Positions 15,553 through 54,132 of a DNA stretch of 64,000 nt are shown piece by piece. The stretch lies in the NCBI GenBank assembly GCA_035084275.1, contig CM068769.1, positions 6,758,001 through 6,822,000 of the forward strand. Reading direction: 5' to 3'. A model generated the notes under the pieces. The model was not told the origin of the DNA. It made no database searches and saw nothing but the letters and a program-made list of their open reading frames with translations. Made by a program: the position numbers and the translations under genes. The DNA is from Hydrolagus colliei (taxonomy: Eukaryota). How positions within the stretch are numbered: the first letter of the stretch is position 1; each line of letters starts with the position of its first letter.

Positions 15553-15559
15553 TGACAGT

Positions 15560-33010: not shown

Positions 33011-33029
33011 GATTTATATGGATACCTAG

Positions 33030-35060
33030 GCCTAGATTTTAATTCAACCACTGTAGGGTTCTACCATCTCTAGCTGAAATTGCCTCTCCGCGTTCTTCTT
33101 TGCAAAACGCATCACTTCCATTTATACAAATTATAAATAATTTGTTACGTTTCTTGTCACAGTCGTTCTGTGTCCCAATATAGTCGGCAACTTTACCTTT
33201 CACGGTTCGCTATTATTTCCAGCTTTATATAATGTGAACCCCACAAATTGTACTCCCTGTACACATATCCAGGTCAATGATACAGACCAAAAGCAACAAT
33301 GGTCCCAGTAAAGGCACCTAGGGGTCACCACTGCATAAATCCATCCGAACAAAAGTTCTCCATCTCTGCTTGAGTCCTGTCTCCCAGCTAATTGTGTATC
33401 CATGCTGCCACTGTCCCTTTACTATACCGAGATTCTGTTTGGCTTAAAAGTCCCCTAAGTAGAATTTTATCAAACAGCATTTCAAAATCCATATTATTTT
33501 CAGTAATATGACTATCTTCATCCGCCCTCTCAGAATTCATCAGAAATATCCATCAGTTTTGTTAAGCATGTGGCCCCTTCAAGAAACTATTTTGACCACA
33601 AATGAACCCCCGCAAAATATATTTTTCCGGATTATATTTCCAAAATGTTTCACTACTTATGTTATGTTAACATGACCTTCCTATATATCCTTGTAGTATC
33701 CTTCTGCTTCTTTCTGTACCACCTCTGAAAAAGACCCTAAAGTATGAAAACTTTAGGGTCATACTTTAGGACCCTAATGAAAACCAAATATCTGCCACTC
33801 TCTTTTATCTGTCTCCAAGTCATTTTGCTGTCCATGCTACCACTAAAAGAAAACGATTAGAGAGCACTTTCCACTACGGGAGGATCTCCCAATGCGCTAG
33901 AAAGTCAGGGTTCGGGACCCGAGGTGCAGGGTTTGGGGGAGATAAGGGACAGAGGTGAGAGTGCGGCACAAGGCACGGAAAGTAATGTCTTGTGACCGGC
34001 ATTACAGGAAGCAAGGGGGTAAGCGAGAGGAAGGGTCTGTGGGATGGAGTTCCACAGTGTGAGGCCAGAGAGGATAAAAATACGGCCACCGTAAGGCGGG
34101 ATACATAAAGCAAACCAGCCCTTTTTAACAGTGTGCTGTCTACAAATCTCTTATGCGGAACTTTATTAAATGCATTTTGGAAAACCATATCAGTTACATA
34201 ACTTCACCACATTTATCCACCCTATGTGTAACTTCATTATAAAATCTGTTGCAACTTTGTCCGAAACGAGTTTGCTTGAATAAATCTCAGTTTGCTGTCC
34301 TTGATAAACTACTTGTTTTCTGAGTGAAGCAAAATTTTCTTCTCAGATTGTAGATTGAAAAAAAAAAATCTTACCTATGACATTAGGCTGATCGATTTGA
34401 GTTCACGGGTTTATGCCTTGGCCCTTATCTATACAGGTGAGAAGCATTTGCAATGCTCCAATCCTCTGGCACCGTCCCGGTGTCAAAGACGATTGGCACA
34501 TTGTGGTCAACGGTTTAGTTATTTCCACCCTTACGTCACCGCATTAACCTGTTTTGTATCCACTCTGGACTGGGTTAGCTCTGCCTATCATCCACATTGT
34601 TATTAGCTAAAGGTGGACAATGGGCGTAGTGCATTTATTGCAGCATATATCGATTATACAATGCTTCTCGGTGAAGTGCTGCATAATAGCCGTGTTAGGA
34701 AAATTGAATCCCATGTTATCAAAACAACAGTGGCAGTAATGGATACAAAGCTATCTGGGAAACAGCAAGTGGAGAGCCGGGGTTAACTGTTGTAATTCTG
34801 AATGAAGGGATGTGTCCAGTGGTGCCAAACGTGCAGGTGTTTCGACATCCGCAATTCTTAACGAACGAGGCGAGACATGATGGAGGCCAGACTGGGCGAG
34901 AGGAGAGGGGGGGGGGGGGGGGTGGTGGTGGTTGTAGATATAGGGATGCCCTAAATATAGAGAGAAGAATTTCCTAGTTTCAGATGATCCATTGATAGGA
35001 AATATAGAAAACGTTGACCAGACTGCAATACGGATTAGGCAGATTGGTGACGTGGGCAGA
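33030..35060. mobile_element. Old CR1 fragments in both orientations plus an L2 tail (33880-34130)
   Basis: Degenerate INDLD/SKFADD, SLDTGTVPED and WIQ-like motifs. Homologous blocks lie at 45.1-47.2 and 57.1-59.2 kb. Confidence 0.6.
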
Positions 35061-36815
35061 TGATTATTGTAGATTAAATGCGTTTTTGAGAGATGTGTGT
35101 ATTGTCGGTTGAAAAATGATGAGAGTCAGTACGATATCGATGACACAATCGTTGGTGCAGGTTCAGCAAATATTTGTAAACGGCTGCACAGGATGCTAAA
35201 AATGAATCAGACAGCATGCTCTAACTTAGAATTTGTGGCATATATTATTGAAGTGATAATGTTGTTATTATTGATAGAAGTAATAGAATTACTTCTATAA
35301 CTAATATTGGTAGTGACGAAATGTCGATGTCAGTAAAGAGGCTACATTGATCTGAAACTGAGTATTTGCTAAAACACTCAGCATTTATCGAGACTTGAGT
35401 TACCTAAACGCATTGAACACTTCAAACATTTTGCGGATTTCTGTAGCTTAGCGATCAGAATGGTCACATTAAAAGCGAGAGCTAAGTTTTCATTTCAATG
35501 TAGGGGCGAAATATTAGATGTGTTTCCTCAGTCCACAAGACTGATAATAATCCATCAAGGTAACAATAATGAACATCATTTAAATCCACGACTGTTTGTG
35601 GTAGACTGTTGTGCGCTACTGGCTACCACGTTTCGACCACAAATACATACACATTTCAATTGGTAGTATATTCTGTAGATAGTATTGAGAAGTCTCTTAT
35701 TCGTGAAAAGTGCAATGCCAAATACAACAAGGATCATTTGTTATTATTATGTCTTTATTTTATGATGAATCTCCTAAAACGGCAGTGATGCCGCAACTAG
35801 ATAATTGTCTTTAGTTCTGATTCCACGCCGTAGGGAGGATGCAACAGCCGTAGACATTGTGTGAACTAGATTAAAGGTCTGGTCGCAGGAATGCAGTAAC
35901 TAAGCTTAATACTGAAAAGTGGGGTCTAATATTACGAGAAGCCCAAATATGTATTTATATTCCTCCATGGTTTAAGCACAACGTAGAAATTGGATTATAA
36001 AATAACCCACAGTTTTCTATAGTTATTTGCAAGCCAGCGATATGCTTGGCACGAATGTAGTTATGCTCTTGGACAAATTTATCAAGTCTAATCTTCTGCA
36101 TTTCTTACTTCCATTTGTTTCTGATATAACACATGTCTCCTGATATTTTTAAAAAAAAACAAATTAATGACGATTGACTAATCTGCATTGACGTTTTGTA
36201 ATCTAATCTATGATACAATGAACTGTAGTCTTTCATTATTTTAAGACGTATACATTTCTCCTTTACTGCTTTTCATTCTATGAAATTCCCTTTAAATATA
36301 TATATTTCTATTCAAGCTGCTAATTTGCATCTTGCTTAATCATTGTTGATATTTGTGTAATTGCTGTGTATTATTAACAATGTATCTTCAAAACATTTTG
36401 TTCATCTTCAATTACCTGCTCGTCTATCGAATCAAAATATGTTCTTCTCACGGTGGTCTAAATTCTAGGCATTTTGATCAATACATTACTATTCCATTTC
36501 TTTTCTGCGGTAACGTTTACAAATCCCATGTGGAGATCAAATTCTAACATTTTTGGATTATAATTTGTCCTATTTTGTTAAATCTGGAAACGATGTTAGC
36601 AAAATAATCTTCCAGATCTGGGAGAAGAATTCAGTTGAGAAGCTGTTTTTTCAGTCATATTTGCTAAGTATCCTTCATTTTCTCTGTACATAATTACTAT
36701 CATGTACGAATCATTATTGTATTCCCAGGAAACATTCTTAAATTGTTTGTTCATATTAGTGTAACTAATTTCAATGATCCCACGCGCTGCTGGTTTTGCA
36801 GCAGGCATTTCTCCA

Positions 36816-36822
36816 CTATAAA
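36816..36822 (+). promoter_or_regulatory. TATA-like box of GPCR copy 1
   Basis: CACTATAAAGAG about 70 bp upstream of the ATG, conserved in copy 2 (~48853). Confidence 0.45.
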
Positions 36823-36888
36823 GAGGGATGATTTTGTTATTGTCACTTCAAAGGTGAAAAGTTAGTGAGTGTCACCAGCACAAAGGAA

Positions 36889-38463
36889 ATGTCGTTCGCT
36901 TTTATGTTAATAGTGAATCAGATAGAACAGATATACTATCCAATTATTGCAGTTATTGGTGTTCCTGGTAAGTCCTTGTTACATCACGTAAGTCAACGTT
37001 TCAATGCATATTTGATTTTGATATGTATCTTACGTTTCCACTCTCCTCATGATATTTTTGCCATCTTATTTGGTATGTATAGGTTAAATAGAAATGTTCA
37101 TAGTTGGCTACACGCAACAGGGTGCGCTTAATCAAAACGTTGCATTCTTTGATATGACAACGAAGCAAAAACATACAAATTATCAATTAATTTATTCCGT
37201 CGTATCACATGTAAACCAGTATTAGAACAGAGAGGTGCCTTTCAGGGAGTTTATGCAACAACAGCTTGCAGTTATAGAGCCCACCTCATGCAGAGCATTC
37301 CAGAGCACTATATGTTCGCTTCACTACATCAGTTCTAACCAAGCTCTCCTGACCCCCTGTTGCCAATAGCATTAGTTTCAGAATTCTCCCAAACTCCCTC
37401 GATCCTTGCAGCACCTGGCACCTGGATGTCGTTTACTGCCACCGTCAAATTCTACAGCGCGATACCCTGGGTCAGGGAGGCTGTACAACTGCAGGTGTTG
37501 AAGTTGACGATTCTGTTGTTGACGTTTACCGTCAGTTTCTCGAATATCTCTTGTGTTTTGTTTGCAGTTAACCTGGTGACGATTGTGATCCTCTGGCGAG
37601 GAAAGTGCGGTCTCTCCACGTGCATCACTCGCTACCTGGTGGCCATGGCGGGGGCAGATCTGACGGTGGTGATATTTGATGTGATACTGAACCGTGTAGG
37701 TGATCAGTATCTCCCAAGTTTTAATGTTCTGCTTTTCACCCCGATCTGCCTTCTGCACGAGGTGCTGCTGTATGTGACATCAGCGTGTTCTGTCTGGTTC
37801 ACAGTGGCTTTCACCTTTGACCGACATGTCGCCATTTGTCACCAGAAATTCAAATCAACATATTGCACCCAGAGAACGGCGGCTGTGGTTCTGGGAACCA
37901 TCTCTGTGCTGAGCTGTGCGCTATACAGTCCTCTGTGTCTGGAGTTTGAACCGCTCTTCATTATTAACAACAAACCTTGGTTTTGTGCTGTTAAATTAAC
38001 TTATTATCAATCACCGAGATGGACAGCGTTTAAGCTGTTTCTATATGTGTTAACCCCAAGCCTTCCATTTGTCATCGTGTTGCTGCTCAATGCTCTGACA
38101 GTCAGACACATTGTGGTCAGCAGTAGAGCCCGCAGAAGACTCCGAGCCCACAGCCCTGGTGAGAAACACATTGATCCAGAGATAGAGAGTCGGAGAAAAT
38201 CCATTGTTTTACTATTTGTCGTATCTGGGAGTTTTGTACTATTGTGGGTGACTTATGTAGCCGCAAATCTTAGTTATTTAATTATGTATTTTTTAGATAC
38301 AGGCAAGCTACTTGGTGAACTTACAAATGTTGGAGATATATTTCGACTTTTTAGTTGTTCCACAAACACGTGTATTTACGCTTTGACACAATCTAAATTC
38401 AGAGAACAGTTGAAGAATATGGTGAAATACCCGTTTCACAAAATATATAAGTTAGTTTGGTGA
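36889..38463 (+). CDS. GPR139/GPR142-like class A GPCR, copy 1 (intact); exons 36889-36967 and 37568-38463, 324 aa
   Basis: Exon 1 MSFAFMLIVNQIEQIYYPIIAVIGVP+G|GTAAGT splices to TTTGCAG|TT. Motifs VNLVTIVILWRGKCGLS, AGADL, AFTFDRHVAIC and CSTNTCIYALTQSKFRE are present. Confidence 0.93.
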
Positions 38464-39329
38464 ACGAAAAATCAAGGTCTTCTAATTATCACTTACTTGG
38501 TTTATACTTCCTTGGTCCCGGAGTACCCAAAACTGAACACAATAATCCAGATGCAGTCTGACAAAGTCGCCGCTTAGTAGAGGGAACATTTGCTCTAATT
38601 TATTTGTCAGACTGCTTGCCACAAAAGATAAAATCTAATTTGTTTTATTGATAGCGGTTTGCTGCTATGATCTGTCTTCTGTTATTAGTTTACCTGAACA
38701 GCAACATCTTTTTTTGTCCTCCATCATACTTATTTTATCCACGGTCAGAAAGTATTTTATTCTTATTTTTCCGGGACCATAGTGGATGACCTCACGCATG
38801 GTTTTCGGTCGAACACGGTTTCTTTCTTTCACTTAATCTGTCTACGTCCGGATCAGTCATCCGGTTCCCATTGTCACAATATACAGTGCCTCTAAATTGT
38901 GTGCCATGTGACGGTTTGGATGTGAAACTCTCTGCTGCTTCATATATGTCGTTTAATTGTTGGTAAAAAGCTGAGGCAACAGAACGGACCCACTGGCCAC
39001 CATTACAAGGTTACTTACGAAGCAAAGTAATTTAATTTTCGCCGACAACCTATTTTTCTTAGAGCTTTATTTTTCATATGTAGTCACTCGAGATCGCTAC
39101 AGCAACATAAATGACGCAGAATTTGTTTGGTATACCTGACAATCTTTGATTTGTTAATATCTGATCTGTACTGATAATTGTTCTTTATTATTGCTAAAAT
39201 ATTAAATATTATTCATGAGCAACAATTTGTAGTTATCTATCAATTGATGCATTTGCCCTTCACACGCTGAGACATTCTGAGCGCGTCATTGGTGCTGTAT
39301 GATCCCATGCCAGCAAACTTTGACTACCA

Positions 39330-39620
39330 GCACGATCGAACTCTCCAAACTGTTCGCTCACCTATCCACCCACCGGGCGCCTCTGCTCGACTTGCATCGG
39401 CCTCCTTCTCATCCCTCGCAGCTATCGACCCACTATCAGAGCTCATGCTTTCAATGACGCCAAACTCTGGAACACTCTCCATCAATTCCTAAGCCTCGCA
39501 GCTTCACTCCCATCTGTCATGCCTCAATAAAAATGTTGCCATTCGACCATTCTTACCCTCTTACCCCTGCACGGAGTCAGACACCGCCACTGTTAAGTGC
39601 TCTGAGACGCTAGTCTGTGT
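39330..39620 (+). mobile_element. Decayed L2-type 3' fragment (also ~51.37-51.65 kb and ~61.56-61.80 kb)
   Basis: CAAACTCTGGAACACTCTCC...CTCGCAGCTTCACTCC...AAGTGCTCTGAGAC resembles the family tail. Confidence 0.55.
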
Positions 39621-40499
39621 GGAGGGCAGTGCCAGCTCTTTCTGTTCCTGATACTCTTTCGTGCACTAAACCCAACTTGTTGTGTTACAGAAGCAAACAA
39701 CCGAACGTTAAAACATTAGTGTGACAGACTCCAGATCACAGGCTAGTGATGTGGTTGTGGGCACGGTCTTGAGTAGTAGTTACATGAAGAATTATTGAGT
39801 CGACAATCACATCTGTTGATATAAAGTTTAATCAAATAAGAGCAACGTCACAGCACAGCTGAGTATTTTGAGTTTTAAAGCAAAATGCTAAATTATTCCG
39901 AAATCAAACACCTTTTCGTCTTGCTCTCTTGTTACCAACTGTAAAGAGAGTTCATCTTCAATCGCTTCTCTATACCGTGGATAATCAACTCCATATTTTA
40001 TTTTAAGACAATAAAGACTCTTAGTGATAACCACCAGCACACAGACTGTATTAATATAACTGACTGTGGAATCAGTTCACCTTTTAAAGTGTGTCAGTAA
40101 CTGGGACCACCCCAATGCTGTCCGCCCAGGTCACAGAGTTCCTTCATCAGCGTCTGATGGACACCACTCGTCGGCGTGACCTGACAGCTACGTTATGATA
40201 TGCTGACAATTTAATGTTCACCAATTCCGTGCCTAATGTTGGATGCTAGAAATACTCAGAAACAGCCGCTTAATCTGGCGTTTCTTGAGAAGGTTTCTAA
40301 AATCATCCGAAAAGTACTTCGCAGACTACATTGTGAAGTTAACGTGGTTGAAAAGGGACAATCAGTTGGTCAAAGCAGTGGTCCCGGAAATTGTCATGAA
40401 TTTAGATACCAATCAGTTTCTTACATGAACGTAAGAACCAACAATGGTCACCACCACCACCACCACAACAACAACAACAACAACTTTGACTTATATAGC

Positions 40500-40925
40500 G
40501 CCCTCAACGCCGGGTTATTCTCTCTGGAGCAGAGAAGATTGAGGGGAGACCTAATAGAGGTTTATAAGATAATGAGGGGTTTCGACAGGGCAAATAGAGA
40601 AAAACTATTTCCACTCGTGGGTGAATCTGTGACTCGTGGTCACAGATTTAAAATAGTTTCAAGGCGAAGTAGAGGGGAGCTGAGGAGAATTTTGTTCACT
40701 CAGCGAGTTGTTCGAATCTGGAATGCATTGCCTGAAAAGGTGATGGAGGCTGATTCGATAACAACTTTTAAAAGGGAATTAGATCTTTATTTAGGGAGAA
40801 CAGGTCTGTTAGGCTATGGGGAGCGGGCAGGGCAGTGGGATTGAATCGCTCGTTTCAAAGAGCCGGCACAGACTAGATGGGCCGAATGGCCTCCTTTTGT
40901 GCCTTAAAATTCTATGAATCTATGA
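40500..40925 (+). mobile_element. CR1 LINE 3' end (absent at the equivalent site of unit 3)
   Basis: GLFSLEQRRLRGDLIEVYKIMRGFDR...GYGERAGQWD with tail ATTCTATGAATCTATGAATCTA. Confidence 0.92.
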
Positions 40926-41039
40926 ATCTAAACTCAGTCGTCTAAGCTAGCTACCCACCTGTAATCTCGCTAGAAGTTCCCCTTTGCCACCATTTACCCT
41001 CTCAGGGCTCAACCACACAACTCGACTTTCCAATGGCCA

Positions 41040-41640
41040 GATTGTGATTCTCCTCAGTGGAAGAGCAGAGGAGGGAGGTCTGCCTCCTTGTCAAGACATT
41101 TCGAGGCGAGGCGAAGGGAGTGAAGAAGAGAGAGAGAGGGGCAGAGGGAGCGGTGAATGTAGAGGGAATGAGGGGGAGAGGCTAAGAGAGTGAGGGAGGG
41201 GGGACAGAGGGAGTGAGAGGAGACAAAGTTAGGGTGGCGAAGGAAGTGAAAGAGTGAGGGAGAGAGGGAGCGGGATGCAGCGGGAACGAGGCAAAGCGAG
41301 TGAGGGCGAGAGAGAGCGAGTGGACTGAGGAAGGGACGGAGGGGAGGGAGAGAGGGGGAGAGTTGAAGGCATTGCGGAAGGGAGCTCGAGAGCCTCGGGC
41401 ATAGGGGCTTAAGTCGGGTCCGCCAAGGGTGGAGCGGAGGATTCGGGGCGTCGAGGAGACCAGACCAGGTGGAGCGAAGGCAACGGGTGCTGGTTTGAGG
41501 AGATAGGAGAGGCTGGGAGGTGCAGAAGAGTGGAGAGATTTAAAATCAAGGGTATGCATCTCGAAATCGAACTCTTTCTCTTGAAACGCGGAGGAGAATG
41601 GGTGAGTGAGGGGGGTGGGTGGGGTGGGTGGTGGGAGTGG
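41040..41640 (-). mobile_element. L2-type 3' fragment with polypurine expansion
   Basis: Homolog of 29.8-30.19 kb. Confidence 0.7.
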
Positions 41641-41918
41641 CGGGGTTCGAGGAGCGAGCTGCTAGAGTTGGTGAAGAACTGGTTAAAATTAGTATAGACT
41701 GTTAAAAACAGAGAGTGGCTAGAATGATGCTATGTGATGTTTTTGTATAACTGCTGTACAACATAAGGGAAGTTACTACACATAGTTTCAGTCGTCAAGG
41801 TCACCATTAGAAACCGGTTACAACAGACTGCGATAAGAAGAGCTCATTAGCGAAGAAAGGCAGAGTTGGGTGTAAAAAGAGAATGTGAATAAGCACGAGA
41901 GTGGCATGAGATGCTCAC

Positions 41919-42097
41919 GTGAACACCATGTGTCCAAGAAAGGATAAAAGTGTTGAGACACAGGAATAGAGCAGAGACGGAGGAGCAGAAGAAGAAGGAC
42001 ATGATGGAAGATACTGTAATGTGACAGTACCCAAGCCGCTCTCGGGAAGGAACAACCGCTGATGGAAGAAACTTTACCACGACAGCAAGGAAGCCGA
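41919..42097 (-). other. Candidate exon with a hydrophobic coding segment (signal peptide MSFFFCSSVSALFLCLNTFILSWTHGVH from ATG 42002, or a TM/GPI-like segment in another frame)
   Basis: Acceptor CTTTTCTTGTCTTTTCCTTCCAG| and donor CAC|GTGAGC; two frames are open. A mini-exon candidate lies at 42273-42331. Confidence 0.4.
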
Positions 42098-42758
42098 CTG
42101 GAAGGAAAAGACAAGAAAAGGACTATCCCTCTTAACCTCGAGTAATGTGTGCCGGGTATTGTGTATGAGGATTACGTGTGCCCTGTAATGTAATATTGCT
42201 TGCTTTAGTGTCAGCTCTATGAGTATACCTGAGTAAAAGAAACCTGGTGTAAAAGACATAAATCAGTAGTACCTGGTCAATCGGAGGCTGGCTGTAACCT
42301 CATTGTTGACCGGAGAAATGATATTTTCCACCTGAGAAATTAATCTCTAACAGAGCGAGGGAGTGACGCAGGGGAAAGAGATAGAGAGGTCTTTAGAATT
42401 AGAGTTAGAGAATAAAAGTAGAGGGTTGTCGGTGGCAGTATGAGAGAATGAGATTGAGTGTGTTTTTGACTGTCTGTCTGAGAGTGTGTGTGACTGTGTG
42501 TTTACAATTTAATAAAGAGACATCAGTCATGCCAAAGCAAGCTTTATTACTAGATAATAATTTCACCAACTGCAGCCCCAAAACCCCCAGTCTTCAGCCC
42601 CCCAGCCCCCAGCCCAAGCCACATTCTTTCATTTCATTGAAGTGTCCCCCGCTTATATTCAAGCTGCTCTTACTAACCCGGAATCCCACTGCGACACTGA
42701 TCAGACTGTGGGATGTCTGAGCAGCCGAACACGGGTGTGATGTGCAGCCTACTTGCCT

Positions 42759-43596
42759 CTAACCTCGCCCTCGCCTCCTAGTTGGTTTCTTGCGAACCGG
42801 TCGACTCCCTGGACTCTTTGGCACCCCGCCAACCCCTCGTCCTCTACCACCCCTTGGCTCCCCGTCACTCTTTGGCGTCCCACGAGCTCCTAGCCCCCAA
42901 TGACCTACATACAACCCACCAACCCCTCCCCCCATCGTAAGTCCTCGCTCCACACGATCCCCTTCCACCGCAGAGTCTCTCTCCTCCAAACAGACGTCTG
43001 GTTCTTTGCAGGGCTCGCACTGGCCGAGTCGATTCCTATTATTCTCCTCAATCTTGCAGCGGTGACTCGAGTAGCGGGGGGTACGATATTCATTGATCAG
43101 GTGATGGAAACCTGCCTTTGTCCACCCGACGTCGCACAGTTTGTCTTTCGGACAATACACCTCGCTGTACACAAAATACTTGTGAACTTCCGGCAAATCG
43201 CTGAACCTTGAAATTATGTAGTTGCACCTGCCACTGAAACACTGCTCCAGACACGGGGTGTTGGTGGTGTAGAACACAAGACAAACTCCGCTTCTCAGAG
43301 AAGGTCTCATAACCTTCCCCAGTTTCTCAGCCCACGAGTCAGGTTTGTTGTTTTCGCCGAATAGGACCTTATGCTCGCTGCATCTCCAGGACGATGAGGG
43401 GTAGACGGCGATGTAATTGTACTTTGAGTTGTGATCAGCCGTCTGTAAATCGGCCTGGCTAAGGATTTGCGCTCTGTCTTGGTTGTTCCACTTGTATTCC
43501 ACCGCGGTTTTACCCTGGCAATGGTCAGCAGTCAGCATGATGAGAAAACCCATCTGTACATCTACAGGTTTCTTTATATCGATACGACTGTGGAAC
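42759..43596 (-). CDS. SNAD-like AID/APOBEC-family zinc deaminase, copy 2 (main exon intact)
   Basis: Acceptor TTTGTCTCCCAG|G. Contains RCSEHKVL (C-x-E), GVCLVFYTTNTPCLEQCFSGRCNYI (PCxxxC), YFVYSEVY, HRC and QCEPC. Motif order matches secreted novel AID/APOBEC-like deaminases as recalled from knowledge of the family; no database search was run. Confidence 0.78.
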
Positions 43597-43849
43597 CTGG
43601 GAGACAAACAACAACAATAGTATTACAATTTACAGAGCAACCTTTCACATCGGGAAGACGTCCCTAGGCGCTGAACAATTAGTTCCGGTCCCGAGCAGTT
43701 GGGGTGGGGAGGCGGGGTAGAGGGAAGGATAGTAGGAGAGGTGGAAAAGTTATGAGGGGAGCAGCAGGCACGGTCAAAGAGGAAGGTATTGAGACCGGCC
43801 TTCAGTGAAGCAAGGGAGGAAGTGAGGCGAAGGGATGAAGGCGAAGTGA

Positions 43850-45070
43850 TGTCACAGAATGTGTGGACGAGGGCAGCGCAGTTGACGTGGTTTACATGGC
43901 CTTTCAAAAGGCATTTGACAAAGTGCCGCATAAGAGGCTTTTTAGGAAAATAGAGGCCCAGGCGTTAAATGGACAGTGGCAGCGTGGATCCACAACTGGC
44001 TGCGAGACAGAAAGCAAAGAGCTGTGGTGAGCGGTTGCATTTCAGACTGGAGGAAAGTGAGCAGTGGCGCCCCCCAGTGATCAGTTATGGGACCACTGCT
44101 CTTTTTAATATATATTAATGATTTGGATTTGGGTTTAGGGAGTACGGTTTCCAAACTTGCAGACGATACTAAGTTAGGGAGAATAGTAAAGGAGGAGGCT
44201 AGTAGCCAACTTCAAGAGGATATAGATAAAATGATAAAGTGGGCAGACACATGGCAGACGAAGTTTAATATACAGAAGTGTGAGGTGATACACTTTGGGA
44301 GAAGAAATGAGGGGAGGCAATATAGGCTAGATGGTACAATTTTCAATGTTGTGGAGGAAGACAGAGACCTAGCGATTTGTGTTAGTGGCTCTTTGAAAGT
44401 GGCATGATAGGTAGACAAACCCGTTAAAAAAGCAAATGGGATACTAGGCTTTATAAATAGTGGTATCGAAAACAAAAGTCAGAAAGTGCCGATAAACTCT
44501 ATAAGACTTTGATTAGGCCTCAGCTGGAGTACAGTATACAGTTATGGTCACCACAATTTAGGAAGGATATTAAGGCATTTGATATAGTGCAGAGGATATT
44601 TACAAGGATGGTACCAGGAATGAGGGACTTCAGCTACGAGGAAATTCTAGACAGTCAAGGATTATTCTCTCTGGAACAATCAAGATTGAGAGAAAACCTA
44701 GTAGAGGTTTATAAGGTTAGGAGAGGTTTCGACAGGGCGAATAGAGAAAGACTGTTTCCAATGGTGCAAGAATCAATGACTGGTGGTCACAGTTTTAAAT
44801 AGTTTCAAAACGAAGCTGAGGGGAGCTGAGGAGAATTTTTTTCACTCAGCGGGTTGTTCGAATCTGGAATCCATTGCCTGAAAAGGTAGTGGAGGCAGAT
44901 TGCATAACAGCTTTTTAAAGGGAACTAGATATTTATTTAGGAAGAGCAGGTCTGATAGGTTACGCTGCGAATGCTGGGCAGTGGGATAGAGTTGCTCTGT
45001 TCAAAGAGCCGGCAAAGACTAGATGTGCCGAATGGCCTCCTTTTGTGCCACATAATTCTATGATTCTATG
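43850..45070 (+). mobile_element. CR1 LINE RT/3' fragment (unit 2)
   Basis: Homolog of 31790-33010. Confidence 0.93.
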
Positions 45071-48000
45071 ATTTATATGGATACCTAGGCCTCGATTTTA
45101 ATTCACCCACTGTAGGGTTCTACCATCTCTAGCTGAAATTGCCTCTCCGCGTTCTTCTTTTCAAAACGCATCACTTCCATTTATACAAATTATAAATCAT
45201 CTGTTACGTTTCTTGGCACAGTCGGTCTGTGTCCCAATATAGTCGGCAACTTTACCTTTCACGGTTCGCTATTATTGCCAGCTTTATATCATGTGAAACC
45301 CACAAATTGTACTCCCTGTACACATATCCAGGTCAATGATACAGACCAAAAGCAGCAATGGTCCCACTAAAGGCACCTATGGGTCACCACTGCACAAATC
45401 AATCCGAACAAAAGTTCTCCATCTCTGCTTGCGTCCTGTCTCCCAGCTAATTGTGTATCCATGCTGCCACTGTCCCTTTACTATACCGAGGTTGTGTTTG
45501 GCTTAAAATTCCCCTATGTGGAATTTTATCAAACATCATTTCAAAATCCATATTCTTTTACCGTAATATGTCTACCTTCATCCGCCCTCTCCGAATTCAT
45601 CAGAAATATCCATCAGTTTTGTAAAGCATGCGGCTCCTTCAAGAAACCATTTTGACCACAAATGAATCCCCGCAAAATATATTTTTACGGATTATATTTC
45701 CAAAATATTTCACTACTTATGTTATGTTAACATCACTTTCCTATATATCCTTGTAGTATCCTTCTGCTTCTTTCTGTACCTCCTCTGAAAAAGACCCTAA
45801 AGTCATGAAAACCAAATATCTGCCACTCTATTTTATCTGTCTCCAAGTCATTTCGCTGTCCATGCTACCACTAAAAGAAAACGATTAGAGAGAACTTTCC
45901 ACTACGGGAGGATCTCCCAATGCGCTAGAAAGTCAGTGGTCGGGACACGAGCATGCGGAAGGTGCAGGGTTTGGGGGAGATAAGGGACAGAAGTGAGAGT
46001 GCGGCACAAGGCACGGAAAGTAATGTCTTGTGACCGGCATTACAGGAAGCAAGGGGGTAAGCGAGAGGAAGGGTCTGTCGGATGGAGTTCCACAGTGTGA
46101 GGCCAGAGAGGATAAAAATACGGCCACCGTAAGGCGGGATACATAAAGCAAACCAGCCCTTTTTAACAGTGTGCTGTCTACAAATCTCTTATGCGGAACT
46201 TTATTAAATGCATTTTGGAAAACCATATCAGTTACATAACTTCACCACATTTACCCACCCTCTGTATAACTTCATCATACAATCTGTTGCAAGTTTGTCC
46301 GAAACGAGTTTGCTTGAATAAATCTCAGTTTGCTGTCCTTGATAAACTACTTGTTTTCTGAGTGAAGCAAAATTTTCTTCTCAGATTGTAGATTGAAAAA
46401 AAACAAATTCCAACCTATGACATTAGGCTGATCGATTTGAGTTCACGGGTTTATCCCTCGGCCCTTATCTATACAGGTGAGAAGCATTTGCAATGCTGAA
46501 ATCCTCTGGCACCGTCCCGGTGTCAAAGACGATTGGCACATTGTGGTCAACGGTTTAGTTATTTCCACCCTTACGTCACCGCATTAACCTGTTTTGTATC
46601 CACTCTGGACTGGGTTAGCTCTGCCTTTCATCCACATTGTTATTAGCTAAAGCTGGACAATGGGCGTAGTGCATTTATTGCAGCATATATCGATTATACA
46701 ATGCTTCTCGGTGAAGTGCTGCATAATAGCCGTGTTAGGAAAATTGAATCCCATGTTATCAAAACAACAGTGGCAGTAATGGATACAAAGCTATCTGGGA
46801 AACAGCAAGTGGAGAGCCGGGGTTAACTGTTGTAATTCTGAATGAAGGGATGTGTCCAGTGGTGCCAAACGTGCAGGTGTTTCGACATCCGCAATTCATA
46901 ATATATACGAACGAGGCGAGACATGATGGAAGCCAGACAGGGTGAGGGGGGGGGGGGGGGGGGGGGGATTGTAGATATAGGGATGACCTAAATATAGAGA
47001 GAAGAATTTTCTAGTTTCAGATGATCCATTGATAGGAAATATAGAAAACTTTGACCAGACTGCAATAGGGATTAGGCAGATTGGTCAAGTGGGCAGAGGA
47101 TTATTGTAGATTAAATACGTTGTTGAGAGATGTGTATATTGTCGGTTGAAAAATGATGAGAGTCAGTACGAGAACGATGACACAATCGTTGGTGCAGATT
47201 CAGCAAATATTTGTAAACGGCTGCACAGGATGCTAAAAATAAATCAGACAGCATGCTCTAACTTAGAATTCGTGGCATATATTATTGAAGTGATAATGTT
47301 GTTATTATGATAGAAGTAATAGTATTACTTCTATAAGTATAATGGTAGTGACGAAATGTCGATGTCAGTAAAGAGGCTACATTGATCTGAAACTGAGTAT
47401 TTGCTAAAACACTAAGCATTTATCGAGACTTGAGTTATCTAAACGCATTGAACACTTCAAACATTGTGTGGATTTCTGCAGCTCAGCGATCAGAACGGCC
47501 ACATTAAAAGCAAGAGCTAAGTGTTCATTTCAATCTAGGGGCGAAATGTTTGATGTGTTTCCTCAGTCCACAAGACTGATAATAATCCACCAAGATAACA
47601 GTAACGAACATCATTTAAATCCACGGCTGTTTGTGGTAGACTGTTGTGCGCTACTGGCTACCACGTTTCGACCACAAATACATACACATTTCAATTGGTA
47701 GTATATTCTGTAGAGAGCATTGAGAAGTCTCTTAGTCGTGAAAAGTGCAATACCGAATACAACAATGATCATTTGTTCTTATTATGTCTTTATTTTATGA
47801 TGAATCTCATAAAACGGCAGTGATGCCGCAACTAGATAATTGTCTTTAGTTCTGATTCCCACGCCGTAGGGAGGATGCAACAGCCTTAGACATTGTGTGA
47901 ACTAGATTAAAGGGCTGGTCCCAGGAATGCAGAAATTAAGCTTAATAATGAAAAGTGTGGTCTAATATTACGAGAATCCCAAATATGTACTTATATTCCT

Positions 48001-48924
48001 CCATTGTTTAAGCAAAACGTAGAATTTCGATTATAAAATCACCCACAGTTTTCTATAGTTATTTGCAATCCAGCGATATGCTCGGCACGAATGCTGTTAT
48101 GGTCTTGGACAAATTCATCAAGTCTAATCTTCTGCATTTCTTACTTCCATTTGTTTCTGATATAACACACGTCTCCTGATATTTTTAAAAAAACAAAATT
48201 AATGACGATTGAGTAATCTGCATTGAAGTTTTGTAATCTAATATATGATACAATGAACTGTAGTCTTTCATTATTTTAAGACGTATACATGTCTCCTTTG
48301 CTGCTTTTCATTCTATTAAATTCCCTTTAAATATATATATTTCTATTCAAGCTGCTAATTTGCAGCTTGCTTTATCTTTGTCGATATTTCTGTAATTGCT
48401 GTGTATTATTAACAATGTATCTTCAAAACATTTTTGTTCATCTTCAATTACCTGCTCGTCTATCAAATCAAACTATGTTCTTCTCACGGTGGTCTAAATT
48501 CTAGGCATTTTGATCAATGCATTGCTGTTCAATTTCTTTTCTGGTGTAACGTTTACAAATCCCATGTGGAGATCAAATTCTAAAATTTTTGGATTATAAT
48601 GTGTCATATTTTGTTAAATCTGGAAACGATGTTAGCAAAATAATCTACCAGATCTGGGAGAAGAATTCAGTTGAGAAGCTGTTTTTTCAGTCATATTTGC
48701 TAAGTATCCTTCATTTTCTCTGTACATAATTACTATCATGTACGAATCATTATTGTATTCCCAGGAAACATTCTTAAATTGTTTGTTCATATCAGTGTAA
48801 CTAATTTCAATGATGCCACCAGCTGCTGGTTTAGCAGCAGGCATTTCTCCACTATAAAGAGGGATGATTTTGTTATTGTCACTTCAAAGGTGAAACGTTA
48901 GTGGGTGTCAGCAGCACAAAGAAA

Positions 48925-50498
48925 ATGTTACACGCTTTTATTTTAATATTGGAACAGATAGAACTGATATACTATCCAATTATTGCAGTTATTGGTGTAC
49001 CTGGTAAGTCCTCATAACTTGTTAGTTCACGTAAGTCAACGTTTCAATACATGTTTTATTTTGATATGTATCTTATGTTTCCACTCTCCTCATGTTATTT
49101 GTACCATCTTATTTATTATGTATAGGTTAAATATAAATTTTCATAGTTGGCAACAGAGTGCGCTTAATCAAAACATTGCATTATTTTATATGCCAATCAA
49201 GCAAAAACATACAAATTGTCAATTAATTTATTCCTTCGTATCACGGGAAAAAAAGTATTAGAACATAAAGGGCTTTTCAGGGAGTTTACGCAACAACAGC
49301 TTGCAGTTATAGAGCCCACCTCATGCAGAGCATTCCAGAGCACTATATGTTCGCTTCACTACATCAGTTCTAAACAAGCTCTCCTGAATCCCTGTTGTCA
49401 ATAGCATTAGTTTCAGAATTCTCCCAAACTCCCTCGATCCTTGCATCACCTGGCACCTGGATGTGGTTTTCTGCCACCGACAAATTCTACAGCGCGATAC
49501 CCTGGGTCAGGGAGGCTGTACAACTGCAGGTGTTGAAGTTGACGATTCTGTTGTTGACGTTTACCGTCAGTTTCTCGAATATTTATTGTGTTTTGTTTGC
49601 AGTTAACCTGGTGACGATTGTGATCCTCTGGCGAGGAAAGTGCGGTCTCTCCACGTGCATCACTCGCTACCTGGTGGCCATGGCGGGGGCAGATCTGACG
49701 GTGGTGATATTTGATGTGATACTGAACCGTGTAGGTGAGCAGTATCTCCCAAGGTTTAATGTTCTGCTTCTCACCCCGATCTGCCTTCTCCACGTGGTGC
49801 TGCTGTATGTGACCTCAGCGTGTTCTGTCTGGTTCACAGTGGCTTTCACCTTTGACCGACATGTCGCCATTTGTTATCAGAAATTCAAATCAACATATTG
49901 CACCCAGAGATCGGCGGCTGTGGTTCTGGGAACCATCTCTGTGCTGAGCTGTGCGCTATACAGTCCTCTGTGCCTGGAGTTAGAACCGCTCTTCATTATT
50001 AACAACAAACCTTGGTTTTGTGTCGCTAAAATAAGTTATTATCTTTCAATGAAATGGACAGTATTTAAGGTATGTCTATATGTTGTGACTCCATGTATCC
50101 CTTTTGTCATCGTTTTGCTGCTCAATGCTCTGACAGTCAGACACATTGTGGTCAGCAGTATAGCCCGCAGAAGACTCCGAGCCCACAGCCCTGGTGAGAA
50201 ACACATTGATCCAGAGATGGAGAGTCGGAGAAAATCCATTGTTTTGCTATTTGTCGTATCTGGGAGTTTTGTACTATTGTGGGTGACTCATGTAGCCGCA
50301 AATCTTAATTTTTTAATTAAGTATTTTTTACATACAGGCAAGCTACGTGGCGCACTTAGAAATGTTGGAGATATATTTCGACTTTTCAGTTGTTCCACAA
50401 ACACGTGTATTTACGCTTTGACACAATCTAAATTCAGAGAACAGTTGAAGAATATGGTGAAATACCCGTTTCACAAAATATATAAGTTAGTTTGGTGA
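48925..50498 (+). CDS. GPR139/GPR142-like GPCR, copy 2 (intact); exons 48925-49003 and 49603-50498
   Basis: MLHAFILILEQIELIYYPIIAVIGVP+G|GTAAGT; exon 2 is open with the same 7TM motifs. Confidence 0.93.
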
Positions 50499-52534
50499 AA
50501 GAAAAATCAAGGTCTTCTAATTATCACTTACTTGGTTTATACTTCCTTGGTCCCGGAGTACCCAAAACTGAACACAATAATCCAGATGCAGTCTGACAAA
50601 GTCGCCGCTTAGTAGAGGGAACATTTGCTCTAATTTATTTGTCAGACTTCTTGCCACAAAAGATAAAATCTAATTTGTTTTATTGATAGCGGTTTGCTGC
50701 TATGATCTCTCTTCTGTTATTAGTTTACCTGAACAGCAACATCTTTTTTTGTCCTCCATCATACTTATTTTATCCACGGTCAGAAAGTATTTTATTCTTA
50801 TTTTTCCGGGACCATAGTGGATGACCTCACGCATGGTTTTCGGTCGAACACGGTTTCCTTCTTTCACTTAATCTGTCTACGTCCGGATCAGTCATCCGGT
50901 TCCCATTGTCACAATACACAGTGCCTCTAAATTGTGTGCCATGTGACGGTTTGGATGTGAAACTCTCTGCTGCTTCATATATGTCGTTTAATTGTTGGTA
51001 AAAAGCTGAGGCAACAGAACGGACCCACTGGCCACCATTACAAGGTTACTTACGATGCAAAGTAATTTAATTTTCGCCGACAACCTATTTTTCTTAGAGC
51101 TTTATTTTTCATATGTAGTCACTCGAGATCGCTACAGCAACATAAATGACGCAGAATTTGTTTGGTATACCTGACAATCTTTGATTTGTTAATATCTGAT
51201 CTGTACTGATAATTGTTCTTTATTATTGCTAAAATATTAAATATTATTCATGAGCAACAATTTGTAGTTATCTATCAATTGATGCATTTGCCCTTCACAC
51301 GCTGAGACATTCTGAGCGCGTCATTGGTGCTGTATGATCCCATGCCAGCAAACTTTGACTACCAGCACGATCGAACTCTCCAAACTGTTCGCTCACCTAT
51401 CCACCCACCGGGCGCCTCTGCTCGACTTGCATCGGCCTCCTTCTCATCCCTCGCAGCTATCGACCCAATATCAGAGCTCATGCTTTCAATGACGCCAAAC
51501 TCTGGAACACTCTCCATCAATTCCTAAGCCTCGCAGCTTCACTCCCATCTGTCATGCCTCAATAAAAATGTTGCCATTCGACCATTCTTACCCTCTTACC
51601 CCTGCACGGAGTCAGACACCGCCACTGTTAAGTGCTCTGAGACGCTAGTCTGTGTGGAGGGCAGTGCCAGCTCTTTCTGTTCCTGATACTCTTTCGTGCA
51701 CTAAACCCAACTTGTTGTGTTACAGAAGCAAACAACCGAACGTTAAAACATTAGTGTGACAGACTCCAGATCACAGGCTAGTGATGTGGTTGTGGGCACG
51801 GCCTTGAATAGTAGTTACATGAAGAATTATTGAGTCGACAATCACATCTGTTGATATAAAGTTTAATCAAATAAGAGCAACGTCACAGCACAGCTGAGTA
51901 TTTTGAGTTTTAAAGCAAAATGCTAAATTATTCCGAAATCAAACACCTTTTCGTCTTGCTCTCTTGTTACCAACTGTAAAGAGAGTTCATCTTCAATCGC
52001 TTCTCTATACCGTGGATAATCAACTCCATATTTTATTTTAAGACAATAAAGACTCTTAGTGATAACCACCAGCACACAGACTGTATTAATATAACTGACT
52101 GTGGAATCAGTTCACCTTTTAAAGTGTGTCAGTAACTGGGACCACCCCAATGCTGTCCGCCCAGGTCACAGAGTTCCTTCATCAGCGTCTGATGGACACC
52201 ACTCGTCGGCGTGACCTGACAGCTACGTTATGATATGCTGACAATTTAATGTTCACCAATTCCGTGCCTAATGTTGGATGCTAGAAATACTCAGAAACAG
52301 CCGCTTAATCTGGCGTTTCTTGAGAAGGTTTCTAAAATCATCCGAAAAGTACTTCGCAGACTACATTGTGAAGTTAACGTGGTTGAAAAGGGACAATCAG
52401 TTGGTCAAAGCAGTGGTCCCGGAAATTGTCATGAATTTAGATACCAATCAGTTTCTTACATGAACGTAAGAACCAACAATGGTCACCACCACCACCACCA
52501 CAACAACAACAACAACAACTTTGACTTATATAGC

Positions 52535-53953: not shown

Positions 53954-54132
53954 GTGAACACCATGTGTCCAAGAAAGGATAAAAGTGTTGAGACACAGGA
54001 ATAGAGCAGAGACGGAGGAGCAGAAGAAGAAGGACATGATGGAAGATACTGTAATGTGACAGTACCCAAGCCGCTCTCGGGAAGGAACAACCGCTGATGG
54101 AAGAAACTTTACCACGACAGCAAGGAAGCCGA
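53954..54132 (-). other. Duplicate of the candidate hydrophobic exon (mini-exon candidate 54308-54366)
   Basis: Same sequence as 41919-42097 at +12035. Confidence 0.4.

What the first reader, a model, noticed from the sequence alone, without database searches (positions are those of the whole stretch)
43239..43382. Zinc site is C-x-E...PCxxxC, not H-x-E
The intact copies read RCSEH and the diverged broken copy reads RCTEH, so the Cys and the catalytic Glu are shared while the middle residue changed. Three-Cys zinc ligation is established for homotetrameric free-cytidine deaminases, whereas AID/APOBECs use His. This may define a new subclade with altered substrate or redox behaviour. Alternatively, the His following the Glu could be the ligand.
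Basis: partly seen in the sequence, partly recalled or inferred. Interest (0 to 1): 0.7.

Follow-up and report, generated by a model that had tools for sequence, protein, structure and literature searches.

The report
Cysteine-type secreted APOBEC-like deaminase gene
The stretch encodes the catalytic centre of a fish-type secreted AID/APOBEC-like deaminase (SNAD1 family). Its first zinc-binding residue really is cysteine instead of the usual histidine, a trait shared by an old, little-described branch of that family in sharks, coelacanth and some ray-finned fishes.

Summary
Window 43239-43382 (minus strand) translates to CSEH...TNTPCLEQC, and an identical copy lies at 55274-55417. A third, frameshifted copy reads RCTEH and has lost the PC of the second motif.

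The exon is a SNAD1-family deaminase domain (Pfam PF18744, 53 bits against a cutoff of 25). Its predicted fold matches AID/APOBEC structures only, not free-cytidine deaminases.

In a 58-sequence family alignment the Cys sits in the zinc-ligand column. That column is always C (19) or H (39). Glu74 is invariant and PCxxxC is near-invariant. The His after the Glu is variable, so it is not the ligand.

With the ligand column masked, C-type and H-type proteins split at one well-supported branch. The C-type branch holds six shark species, coelacanth, bowfin and a sucker fish, and all 22 C-type sequences seen keep Cys, Glu and PCxxxC.

So the subclade is real, but it is not private to this locus. Its members are already public, mostly as uncharacterized proteins. 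The papers I could read describe a His site, or treat a C-type sequence as lacking the motif.

Activity, zinc binding, and substrate or redox consequences are untested. The signal-peptide exon was not found in the window, and the two intact copies are not independent.

The parts
42759..43596 (-). Main coding exon/ORF of a SNAD1-like secreted AID/APOBEC-like deaminase (intact copy B). Residues 1-205 (43595 down to about 42981) are the deaminase domain plus the Cys cluster. The last ~80 codons are a G/R-rich low-complexity tail of uncertain reality.
   Evidence: ORF. Pfam SNAD1 53.3 bits, E=4.6e-14. Family HMM E=3e-41. AF2 pLDDT 74 and 72. Foldseek top 43 PDB hits are all AID/APOBEC.
43597..43617 (-). 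Splice acceptor (polypyrimidine tract plus CAG) just before the conserved Phe. The exon starts with one base that completes a split codon.
   Evidence: Read. The catshark homolog's gene has its exon 1/exon 2 boundary at the same aligned position.
43239..43382 (-). Zinc/catalytic motif: Cys72 (43380-43382), Glu74 (43374-43376), Pro114-Cys115 (43251-43256), Cys119 (43239-43241). The non-conserved His75 is at 43371-43373.
   Evidence: Column statistics: position 72 is C19/H39, E74 58/58, P114 57/58, C115 56/58, C119 56/58.
42990..43058 (-). C-terminal four-cysteine cluster C180...C193-x-x-C196...C202, a hallmark of SNAD1/SNAD2.
   Evidence: C180 54/58, C193 53/58, C196 53/58, C202 52/58. The feature is described in PMC5889660.
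54794..55631 (-). Second intact copy (copy C), 100% identical to copy B. Its zinc motif is at 55274-55417.
   Evidence: It lies in a near-identical ~6-kb block.
30803..31531 (-). Diverged, broken copy (copy A). RCTEH at 31306-31320. An 11-for-9-nt replacement at 31184-31194 shifts the frame and deletes the Pro-Cys of PCxxxC. Premature stop at 31147-31149.
   Evidence: dN/dS against the intact copy is 1.05 (7 synonymous, 29 non-synonymous differences).
33777..57850 (.). Two tandem repeat units of about 12.03 kb. Each carries one SNAD1-like exon (-) and one rhodopsin-type 7TM receptor ORF (+). A third, older partial unit lies upstream (30506-33751).
   Evidence: Self-BLAST. Difference profile. 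Pfam 7tm_1.

Best explanation
The region is the active-site core of a secreted-type AID/APOBEC-like deaminase of the SNAD1 family. It belongs to an old 'Cys-type' branch of that family.

Proposed mechanism (inferred):
- One catalytic Zn2+ is held by three thiolates plus a water. The thiolates are Cys72 at the N-terminus of helix 2, and Cys115 and Cys119 at the loop-5/helix-3 junction.
- Glu74 shuttles the proton for hydrolytic deamination of cytosine in single-stranded nucleic acid, as in AID/APOBECs.
- Cys72 replaces the usual His ligand.
- Branch-specific neighbours changed together with it: Arg71 (11/19, against Glu/Asp in His-type), Lys76 (17/19), Tyr61 (19/19) and Phe120 (19/19). These may offset the extra negative charge and the lost His-base stacking.
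- The four C-terminal cysteines probably form stabilising disulfides in the secreted protein.

What is shown: the sequence, family membership, the ligand-column assignment, clade structure, and fold class.

What is inferred: zinc binding by three Cys, catalytic activity, substrate, secretion of this particular gene product, and the compensating role of Arg71/Lys76. Identity as a Cys-type SNAD1-like deaminase domain: about 0.9. That it is a working tri-cysteine zinc deaminase: about 0.55.
For: - Pfam SNAD1 above its threshold. All 16 nearest relatives are SNAD1.
- Foldseek against the PDB: ranks 1-43 are all APOBEC3/AID/APOBEC1, with probability up to 1.0. dCMP and Rib2 deaminases appear only at E>0.3.
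- Both AF2 models place a helix (156-169) between strands 4 and 5. This is the helix-4 topology of AID/APOBEC, not the C-terminal hairpin of CDA (topology definitions from PMC5889660).
- Ligand column is C19/H39 with no other residue. E74 is invariant and PCxxxC near-invariant.
- All 22 C-type sequences keep C, E and PCxxxC. This spans sharks to teleosts, and a dead site would be expected to decay.
- C-type and H-type are separated by a single branch, SH-aLRT 98, with the ligand column masked.
- Co-varying Arg71, Lys76, Tyr61 and Phe120.
- Asn60 (55/58) and an aromatic residue at 147 (57/58) fit the loop-3 Asn and loop-7 aromatic that PMC5889660 lists as cytosine contacts.
- A relaxed hhalign run pairs C72/E74/P114-C115 with His56/Glu58/Pro86-Cys87 of AID.
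- Three-Cys zinc sites are catalytically competent in homotetrameric CDAs (PMC6686228).
- SNAD1-domain proteins were detected in nurse-shark plasma (PMC9207270).
Against: - No SNAD of any type has a demonstrated deaminase activity (PMC11004436).
[quoted passage not shown] On that view a Cys form could be inactive or work differently.
- I had no model coordinates, so the Cys-Cys-Cys geometry was not measured.
- Model confidence is moderate (pLDDT 72-74) and TM-scores to APOBECs are only 0.3-0.39.
- The hhalign link to AID is weak (E about 0.04). At default settings it covers only the strand-3/PC region.
- The covariation of Arg71 and Lys76 rests on one phylogenetic split, so it counts as a single event.
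- For this locus specifically: no signal-peptide exon was found. The ORF runs on into an ~80-residue G/R-rich tail that homologs lack. dN/dS against the broken copy is about 1.
Confidence: 0.6

Rival explanations
1. Cys-type SNAD1-like proteins are catalytically dead or re-purposed. They would be, for example, nucleic-acid- or ligand-binding plasma proteins that keep a structural zinc site but no longer deaminate.
For: [quoted passage not shown] PMC11004436 lists the Cys-type Latimeria protein XP_014353512.1 among sequences lacking the canonical motif. No SNAD activity has been shown.
Against: The catalytic Glu is invariant in 58/58 sequences, including all C-type members. Pro-Cys-x3-Cys and the loop-3 Asn and loop-7 aromatic are also kept. 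A purely structural zinc site would not need the Glu. Three-Cys sites are active in tetrameric CDAs.
Confidence: 0.2
2. The copies in this window are not functional genes. They would be exon-2-only relics of a duplicated segment, whatever the activity of the family. This concerns the locus and can hold together with the main explanation.
For: - No exon-1/signal-peptide candidate was found on the minus strand upstream of any copy.
- One of the three copies is frameshifted.
- dN/dS between the intact and broken copy is 1.05.
- The ORF reads through into a G/R-rich tail not seen in homologs.
- LINE fragments lie directly upstream.
- The two intact copies are one recent event.
- No protein at least 50% identical exists among 1.84 billion representatives; the best identity is 41%.
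Against: The intact copy keeps an open frame of 282 codons, a good acceptor at the family's exon boundary, and every family-invariant residue, including all 14 invariant columns of the C-type alignment. Short signal-peptide exons are hard to find by homology. SNADs are reported to evolve fast (PMC5889660), so dN/dS near 1 is ambiguous.
Confidence: 0.3
3. Cys72 is not a metal ligand. It would be disulfide-bonded in this Cys-rich secreted protein, and another residue, such as His75, would complete the zinc site.
For: The protein has many cysteines and is predicted to be extracellular. His75 follows the Glu in this copy.
Against: - Position 75 is H/Y/N/F/K/S/T among C-type members, so it is not conserved.
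- No C-type-specific conserved His exists anywhere in the domain.
- The C column alternates only with H, the canonical ligand.
- Other conserved cysteines (C26, C105) are shared with His-type proteins, so they are not compensatory partners.
Confidence: 0.05
4. It is a free-nucleoside cytidine deaminase of the tetrameric CDA type, the family in which C-x-E...PCxxC is standard.
For: The three-Cys motif alone resembles it.
Against: - No CDA appears among the Foldseek hits; the top 43 are AID/APOBEC.
- There is a helix between strands 4 and 5 rather than a hairpin.
- Pfam assigns it to SNAD1.
- PDB sequence searches find no CDA.
- The domain is over 200 residues and has the SNAD-specific Cys cluster.
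Confidence: 0.02

Closest known systems
[quoted passage not shown] 2018, PMC5889660), His-type core members such as zebrafish si:dkey-96g2.1 and carp SNAD1/Cap31
   Same: Same domain family. Same P-C-x3-C spacing, invariant Glu, C-terminal C...CxxC...C cluster, conserved C26 and C105, Asn60 and loop-7 aromatic. Tandem, lineage-specific gene copies with pseudogenes, as described for the family.
   Different: - First zinc ligand is Cys, not His.
- Neighbours are Arg71/Lys76/Tyr61/Phe120, against Glu/Val-Ile/Val/Ile.
- It scores only 53 bits on the Pfam model, against 160-250 bits for cyprinid members.
- It is 22-28% identical to them.
- No signal-peptide exon was located here.
Cys-type SNAD1-like proteins of sharks (Scyliorhinus, Stegostoma, Heptranchias, Pristiophorus, Heterodontus, Mustelus), Latimeria, Amia and Xyrauchen. 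The nurse-shark plasma 'SNAD1 orthologs' (PMC9207270) are probably of this type; their sequences were not examined.
   Same: Same clade (SH-aLRT 98). R/x-C-[ST]-E-x-K and T-P-C-x3-C-F signatures. Same exon boundary as the catshark gene.
   Different: The window protein is a long branch with at most 41% identity to any of them. It has Val104 where the others have Gly and a G/R-rich C-terminal tail. The homologs have clear signal peptides.
Classical AID/APOBEC deaminases (AID, APOBEC1, APOBEC3A-H)
   Same: Best and only significant structural matches. Helix-4 topology. [H/C]xE...PCxnC in the corresponding places.
   Different: They use His as the ligand, are intracellular, and have helices 5 and 6 where SNAD1 has a beta-hairpin. 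The window protein has a longer spacer between the motifs (39 residues against about 27 in AID). No sequence similarity is detectable by phmmer or hmmsearch.
Homotetrameric cytidine deaminases (CDA/CDD; e.g. Bacillus subtilis, human, Trypanosoma brucei CDA)
   Same: Three-cysteine zinc site C-x-E...P-C-x-x-C with a catalytic Glu (PMC6686228). This is a working precedent for a tri-thiolate deaminase site.
   Different: They belong to a different division of the fold (C-terminal hairpin, no helix 4; PMC3239186). They are small, act on free nucleosides, and give no structural or sequence match here.
Bacterial YwqJ-type toxin deaminase clade (Iyer et al. 2011, PMC3239186)
   Same: Precedent for a single deaminase clade that holds both HxE and CxE members.
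   Different: Bacterial polymorphic-toxin domain, unrelated lineage. Named only as a precedent and not examined here.

Membership tests
SNAD1 (Pfam PF18744) | Profile match above the curated gathering score | tested here: met
   53.3 bits against a cutoff of 25, E=4.6e-14, covering profile positions 17-184 of 213. The score is low next to core members at 160-250 bits.
SNAD1 (Pfam PF18744) | Deaminase zinc/catalytic signature [H/C]xE ... PCxnC in the family's columns | tested here: met
   C72-S-E74 ... P114-C115-x3-C119. Column counts C19/H39, E 58/58, PC 56-57/58, C119 56/58.
SNAD1 (Pfam PF18744) | Histidine as first zinc ligand, as described for SNAD1 and AADs in PMC11004436 and PMC5889660 | tested here: not met
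   Cys72 in the window and in all 22 C-type relatives.
SNAD1 (Pfam PF18744) | Four-cysteine cluster: Cys at the end of strand 5, CxxC in strand 6, Cys in strand 7 | tested here: met
   C180, C193-E-P-C196, C202. Strands 175-183 and 186-195 in model 1.
SNAD1 (Pfam PF18744) | [quoted passage not shown] | tested here: inconclusive
   The AF2 models show short helices (23-26; 47-52 in model 2) between strand 16-21 and strand 61-64, and two C-terminal strands after helix 156-169. The pLDDT there is only 56-80.
SNAD1 (Pfam PF18744) | N-terminal signal peptide (secretion) | tested here: inconclusive
   Homologs have one, encoded by a separate exon 1 in catshark. No convincing exon 1 was found in the window by HMM or by signal-peptide/donor scans.
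AID/APOBEC-like deaminases (helix-4 division) | Deaminase fold with helix 4 between strands 4 and 5, and closest structural neighbours AID/APOBEC | tested here: met
   Helix 156-169 lies between strands 137-145 and 175-183. Foldseek ranks 1-43 are all AID/APOBEC, probability up to 1.0, TM 0.3-0.39.
AID/APOBEC-like deaminases (helix-4 division) | Loop-3 Asn and loop-7 aromatic residue that contact the target cytosine | tested here: inconclusive
   Asn60 is conserved in 55/58 and an aromatic at 147 in 57/58, at the expected places. Their structural equivalence to APOBEC3A N57 and Y130 was not checked on coordinates.
AID/APOBEC-like deaminases (helix-4 division) | C-to-U deamination of single-stranded nucleic acid | not testable with these tools
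   A biochemical assay is needed. No activity has been reported for any SNAD.
Homotetrameric cytidine deaminase (CDA/CDD) | Three-Cys C-x-E ... PCxxC zinc motif | tested here: met
   The motif is present, with x3 rather than x2 between the last two Cys. Family definition.
Homotetrameric cytidine deaminase (CDA/CDD) | C-terminal hairpin topology (strands 4 and 5 adjacent, no helix 4) and sequence or structure similarity to CDA | tested here: not met
   A helix lies between strands 4 and 5. There are no CDA hits by Foldseek or by PDB or Pfam sequence searches.

The most novel reading that the evidence does not exclude
Cys-type SNAD1-like proteins would form an ancient gnathostome lineage, paralogous to the His-type SNAD1/2 lineage since before the ray-finned/lobe-finned fish split. 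In sharks only this type was recovered here. They would be active secreted nucleic-acid deaminases with a tri-cysteine zinc site, which would be the first exception to the rule that active AID/APOBEC-like enzymes use His. The co-evolved Arg71, Lys76, Tyr61 and Phe120 would give them a different pH or redox sensitivity or a different way of gripping the base.
Probability: 0.35. Interest if true: 0.6.

Novelty: new variant of a known kind. Interest (0 to 1): 0.45.

Why it matters
AID/APOBEC-type mutators are central to vertebrate immunity and are used as base editors. Their zinc site is always described as His plus two Cys.

A conserved branch with three Cys, present in sharks (where such proteins circulate in plasma), coelacanth, bowfin and a teleost, would show that the His is replaceable in this fold. 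It would also give natural material for asking what the His contributes, for example base stacking, zinc Lewis acidity, or resistance to oxidation outside the cell.

It also corrects published descriptions that give SNAD1 a His site or count a Cys-type member as lacking the motif.

For genome annotation, the locus is a tandem, partly decayed SNAD1-like array next to 7TM receptor genes and an antigen-receptor V segment.

Tried and rejected
- **Word-indexed search, single sequence.** The homolog search with the single sequence found nothing. The exhaustive HMMER search was needed.
- **PDB sequence searches.** Searches with the protein and with the family profile gave only chance hits, a pilin and ribosomal L3. 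The link to APOBECs needed a predicted structure.
- **hhalign at default settings.** Against AID alone or AID plus APOBEC3G it aligns only the strand-3/PC region. The C72-His56 pairing appears only at mact 0.05 and is weak, so I treat it as consistent, not decisive. The -glob run failed.
- **Exon 1 (signal peptide).**
  - An N-terminal HMM gave only noise.
  - The best-looking piece, 'DLVDYFANIVSRF' at 48607-48666 (-) and 36547-36630 (-), has no Met and no donor, and ends in a stop.
  - 'MIIVVFGIALF...' at 47772 (-) has a donor only in the wrong phase and no family similarity.
  - 'MDTQLAGRQ...' at 45462 (-) is not signal-like.
- **Motif-only significance.** This is weak; 13% of shuffles give a hit, so the case rests on the domain.
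- **Identity of the two intact copies as a sign of selection.** Rejected, because the whole ~6-kb block including non-coding DNA is near-identical.
- **Synteny with the catshark SNAD1 locus.** No shared neighbours in the 24 kb fetched.
- **Supplements of PMC5889660.** The SNAD1 alignment figure and synapomorphy table are not held. I cannot exclude that the Cys is visible or noted there.
- **Charge compensation by Arg56 in B. subtilis CDA.** This is from my memory only; I found no paper in the library to cite for it.
Full report
**1. What is at the coordinates**

Window 43239-43382 on the minus strand translates to CSEHKVLFGENNKPDSWAEKLGKVMRPSLRSGVCLVFYTTNTPCLEQC. That is Cys-x-Glu, 39 residues, then Pro-Cys-x3-Cys.

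It lies in an 849-nt ORF at 42759-43607 (-). A polypyrimidine tract and CAG at 43597-43617 precede it, so the ORF is a eukaryotic exon that starts at 43596.

The window is vertebrate-like. It holds LINE reverse-transcriptase fragments, single-exon rhodopsin-type 7TM receptor ORFs and an immunoglobulin-type V gene segment.

tblastn finds three copies of the exon:
- 43607-42762 and 55642-54797, which are 100% identical.
- 31542-30902, which is diverged and lies in two frames.

The diverged copy reads RCTEH at 31306-31320. It has 11 nt (a duplicate of the following CTGGAGCAGTGT) at 31184-31194 where the intact copies have 9 nt. This shifts the frame, removes the Pro-Cys of the second motif and leads to a stop at 31147-31149.

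Two qualifications apply:
- The copies belong to a tandem repeat of about 12.03 kb. The two intact exons sit in a ~6-kb block that differs at only 5 positions between units, non-coding DNA included. They count as one observation.
- The bare motif is not rare enough to mean much. 13 of 100 shuffles give at least one match.

**2. What it is**

[quoted passage not shown] There is a sub-threshold hit to SNAD2 that starts exactly at Cys72.
- **Homolog searches.** A word-indexed search found nothing. An exhaustive HMMER search of 1.84 billion representatives found 16 relatives, the best 37-41% identical. All are SNAD1 by Pfam. A profile of those relatives, without the window sequence, hits the intact copies at E=3e-41.
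- **Named relatives.** These are uncharacterized proteins of catshark, zebra shark, sevengill shark, sawshark, coelacanth, bowfin, razorback sucker and a loach. A later search added horn shark and Mustelus.
- **Gene structure.** The catshark gene has two coding exons. Exon 1 encodes residues 1-33, including the signal peptide, followed by a 3.5-kb intron. The boundary falls just before the conserved Phe, the same place as the window's acceptor.
- **Predicted structure.** AlphaFold2 with the family alignment gives pLDDT 74 and pTM 0.77. With the larger alignment it gives pLDDT 72.
- **Fold comparison.** Foldseek against the PDB returns AID/APOBEC structures only at ranks 1-43 (APOBEC3C/G/B/A/H, APOBEC1, AID). 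Probability is up to 1.0 and TM 0.3-0.39. dCMP and Rib2 deaminases appear only at E>0.3.
- **Topology.** Both models put a helix (156-169) between strands 4 and 5. This marks the helix-4 division, which includes AID/APOBEC. The CDA division has strands 4 and 5 as a hairpin (definitions in PMC5889660 and PMC3239186).

The protein is therefore not a free-cytidine deaminase, despite its three-Cys motif.

**3. Is the Cys in the His column?**

Four lines of evidence agree.

(a) In a 58-sequence family alignment the column is C in 19 and H in 39 sequences, and never anything else. Glu74 is invariant. Pro114, Cys115 and Cys119 are present in 56-57 of 58.

(b) The spacing P-C-x3-C is the same in both types.

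(c) In both models Cys72 caps the helix that follows strand 2. Cys115 and Cys119 sit at the start of the helix after strand 3, as in all deaminases.

(d) hhalign of the family profile against AID plus the two APOBEC3G domains pairs C72 with His56, E74 with Glu58 and P114-C115 with Pro86-Cys87. My typed AID was verified against PDB chains, and the APOBEC3G segments were taken from that output. This pairing appears only with a relaxed alignment threshold and at E about 0.04. At default settings only the strand-3/PC part aligns.

The residue after the Glu is H/Y/N/F/K/S/T among Cys-type members. No Cys-type-specific conserved His exists elsewhere in the domain.

**4. A real subclade, but not a private one**

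With the ligand column masked, a maximum-likelihood tree separates all 19 Cys-type from all 39 His-type sequences at one branch (SH-aLRT 98). One change explains the trait.
- The Cys-type side holds the sharks, coelacanth, bowfin and the sucker Xyrauchen.
- The His-type side holds cyprinids and loaches, including zebrafish si:dkey-96g2.1 and carp, and a frog.
- Cypriniform fishes occur on both sides, and bony vertebrates occur on both sides. The two types therefore look like old paralogs rather than a recent switch. The root is unknown and my sampling is limited.

Three further horn-shark proteins are also R-C-S-E-x-K / T-P-C-x3-C-F, making 22 of 22 Cys-type sequences with the full motif.

The window protein is a long branch inside this side.

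Pfam scores differ sharply. Cyprinid His-type proteins score 160-250 bits on SNAD1. Cys-type proteins score only 31-58 bits. The frog scores best on SNAD2.

Several columns switch together with the ligand:

| Position | Cys-type | His-type |
|---|---|---|
| 71 | Arg 11/19 | Glu/Asp 30/39 |
| 76 | Lys 17/19 | Val/Ile/Arg/Phe |
| 61 | Tyr 19/19 | Val 36/39 |
| 120 | Phe 19/19 | Ile 30/39 |

The window copy has Arg71, Lys76, Tyr61 and Phe120. Because all of this rests on one split, it is one evolutionary event and not statistical proof of coupling.

**5. What the literature says**

- Krishnan et al. 2018 (PMC5889660) defined the SNADs. They give the superfamily signature as HxE/CxE/DxE. [quoted passage not shown]
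- They list SNAD1 in coelacanth but not in cartilaginous fish.
- Majewska et al. 2024 (PMC11004436) describe SNAD1 as having one His and two Cys. They list XP_014353512.1 among two sequences lacking the motif. That accession is the coelacanth Cys-type protein in my set.
- Bakke et al. 2022 (PMC9207270) found two SNAD1-domain proteins in nurse-shark plasma and called them SNAD1 orthologs, with no comment on the zinc site.
- No paper in the library mentions a Cys-type SNAD.
- The supplement of Krishnan et al., which holds the SNAD1 alignment, is not available here. I cannot exclude that the Cys is visible there.
- Three-Cys zinc sites are standard and active in homotetrameric CDAs (PMC6686228).
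- At least one bacterial deaminase clade mixes HxE and CxE (PMC3239186).

**6. How it most likely works**

Shown:
- Family and fold class.
- Ligand-column assignment.
- Conservation of Cys72, Glu74, Pro114-Cys115 and Cys119.
- The four-Cys C-terminal cluster C180/C193/C196/C202, which is the SNAD1/2 hallmark.
- Asn60 (55/58) and an aromatic at position 147 (57/58), at the places where AADs carry the cytosine-contacting loop-3 Asn and loop-7 aromatic.

Inferred:
- Zn2+ is bound by the three thiolates and a water.
- Glu74 acts as the proton shuttle.
- The substrate is cytosine in single-stranded nucleic acid.
- The protein is secreted.
- Arg71 and Lys76 offset the extra thiolate charge.
- Tyr61 and Phe120 replace the lost His-base stacking.

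The strict retention of the catalytic Glu across the whole Cys-type branch argues for catalysis rather than a merely structural metal site. No SNAD has yet been assayed.

**7. State of this locus**

The intact copy keeps all 14 invariant columns of the Cys-type alignment and a proper acceptor. Against that:
- I found no signal-peptide exon upstream of any copy.
- The ORF continues about 80 codons into a G/R-rich tail that homologs lack.
- LINE fragments lie just upstream.
- One copy is broken.
- dN/dS between the intact and broken copy is 1.05, from 7 synonymous and 29 non-synonymous differences. This fits neutral decay or the fast evolution reported for SNADs equally well.

Whether this particular gene is expressed cannot be decided from the sequence.

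**8. Verdict**

- The core interpretation, a three-Cys site in the His column, is supported. The His75 alternative is rejected.
- The 'new subclade' is real but already populated by public, mostly uncharacterized proteins of a known family.
- Functional consequences are untested.
- It is best filed as an under-described variant (Cys-type) of a known kind (SNAD1-like secreted AID/APOBEC-like deaminases), with the window gene as a divergent new member.
- Interest is moderate. It contradicts a published generalisation and is easy to test. However, Cys/His exchange at this position is common in the wider deaminase superfamily.

Noticed in passing
window 6950-7448 (-): A complete antigen-receptor V gene segment. 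It has a leader exon (MMQNFTATYAVINFFVLVLC, GTAAGT donor), an intron, and a V-set exon ending ...TATYFCAT (Pfam V-set, E=1.5e-12). A recombination signal follows: heptamer CACAGTG, 23-nt spacer, nonamer ACAAAAACA. The deaminase array therefore lies about 24-48 kb from a rearranging V segment. Whether this is a TCR or Ig locus was not determined.
   Followed up: partly
window 37360-38463 (+), 49395-50498 (+), 59552-60652 (+), 12752-13273 (+): Single-exon rhodopsin-family 7TM receptor ORFs (Pfam 7tm_1), one per tandem unit and interleaved with the SNAD1-like exons on the opposite strand. The 59.5-60.6 kb copy is split into two ORFs, and the 12.7 kb one is partial. The subfamily was not identified.
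   Followed up: partly
window 39000-45050 vs 51035-57085: The two ~12-kb repeat units are about 97.5% identical overall. The differences are concentrated at 33.8-38.7 kb, including the 7TM gene. The remaining ~6 kb, with the SNAD exon, LINE fragments and intergenic DNA, differs at only 5 positions. This suggests recent gene conversion or duplication, or an assembly duplicate.
   Followed up: partly
window ~15000-30000: A long low-complexity block with strong strand asymmetry (GC skew down to -0.5, GC up to 58%). It gives spurious Cys/Gly/Val- or Thr/His/Pro-rich ORFs of up to 743 codons and contains internal ~3.6-kb direct repeats (17169-20785 vs 20785-24381).
   Followed up: no
window 42759-42980 (-) and 54794-55015 (-): After the last family cysteine the ORF runs on for about 80 codons of Gly/Arg-rich sequence before the stop. 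Most homologs end within 2-10 residues, apart from three with long Cys-rich C-terminal extensions. The broken copy has a GGTGAGT donor-like site at the corresponding place, which the intact copies lack.
   Followed up: no
related proteins P0001 (Xyrauchen), P0006 (Amia), P0008 (Latimeria): Three Cys-type relatives carry a long extra C-terminal extension (~100-150 residues) packed with CxxC-like cysteine repeats. The shark proteins and the window gene lack it.
   Followed up: no
related proteins P0065/P0066 (Eleutherodactylus frog): These frog His-type proteins score higher on Pfam SNAD2 (142 bits) than on SNAD1 (121 bits). SNAD2 was described as restricted to ray-finned fishes (PMC5889660).
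   Followed up: no
related protein P0007 (681 aa): One hit of the exhaustive search carries the SNAD1-like domain at its C-terminus (residues 511-673) in a much longer protein. It could be a fusion or a gene-model artefact and was not examined.
   Followed up: no
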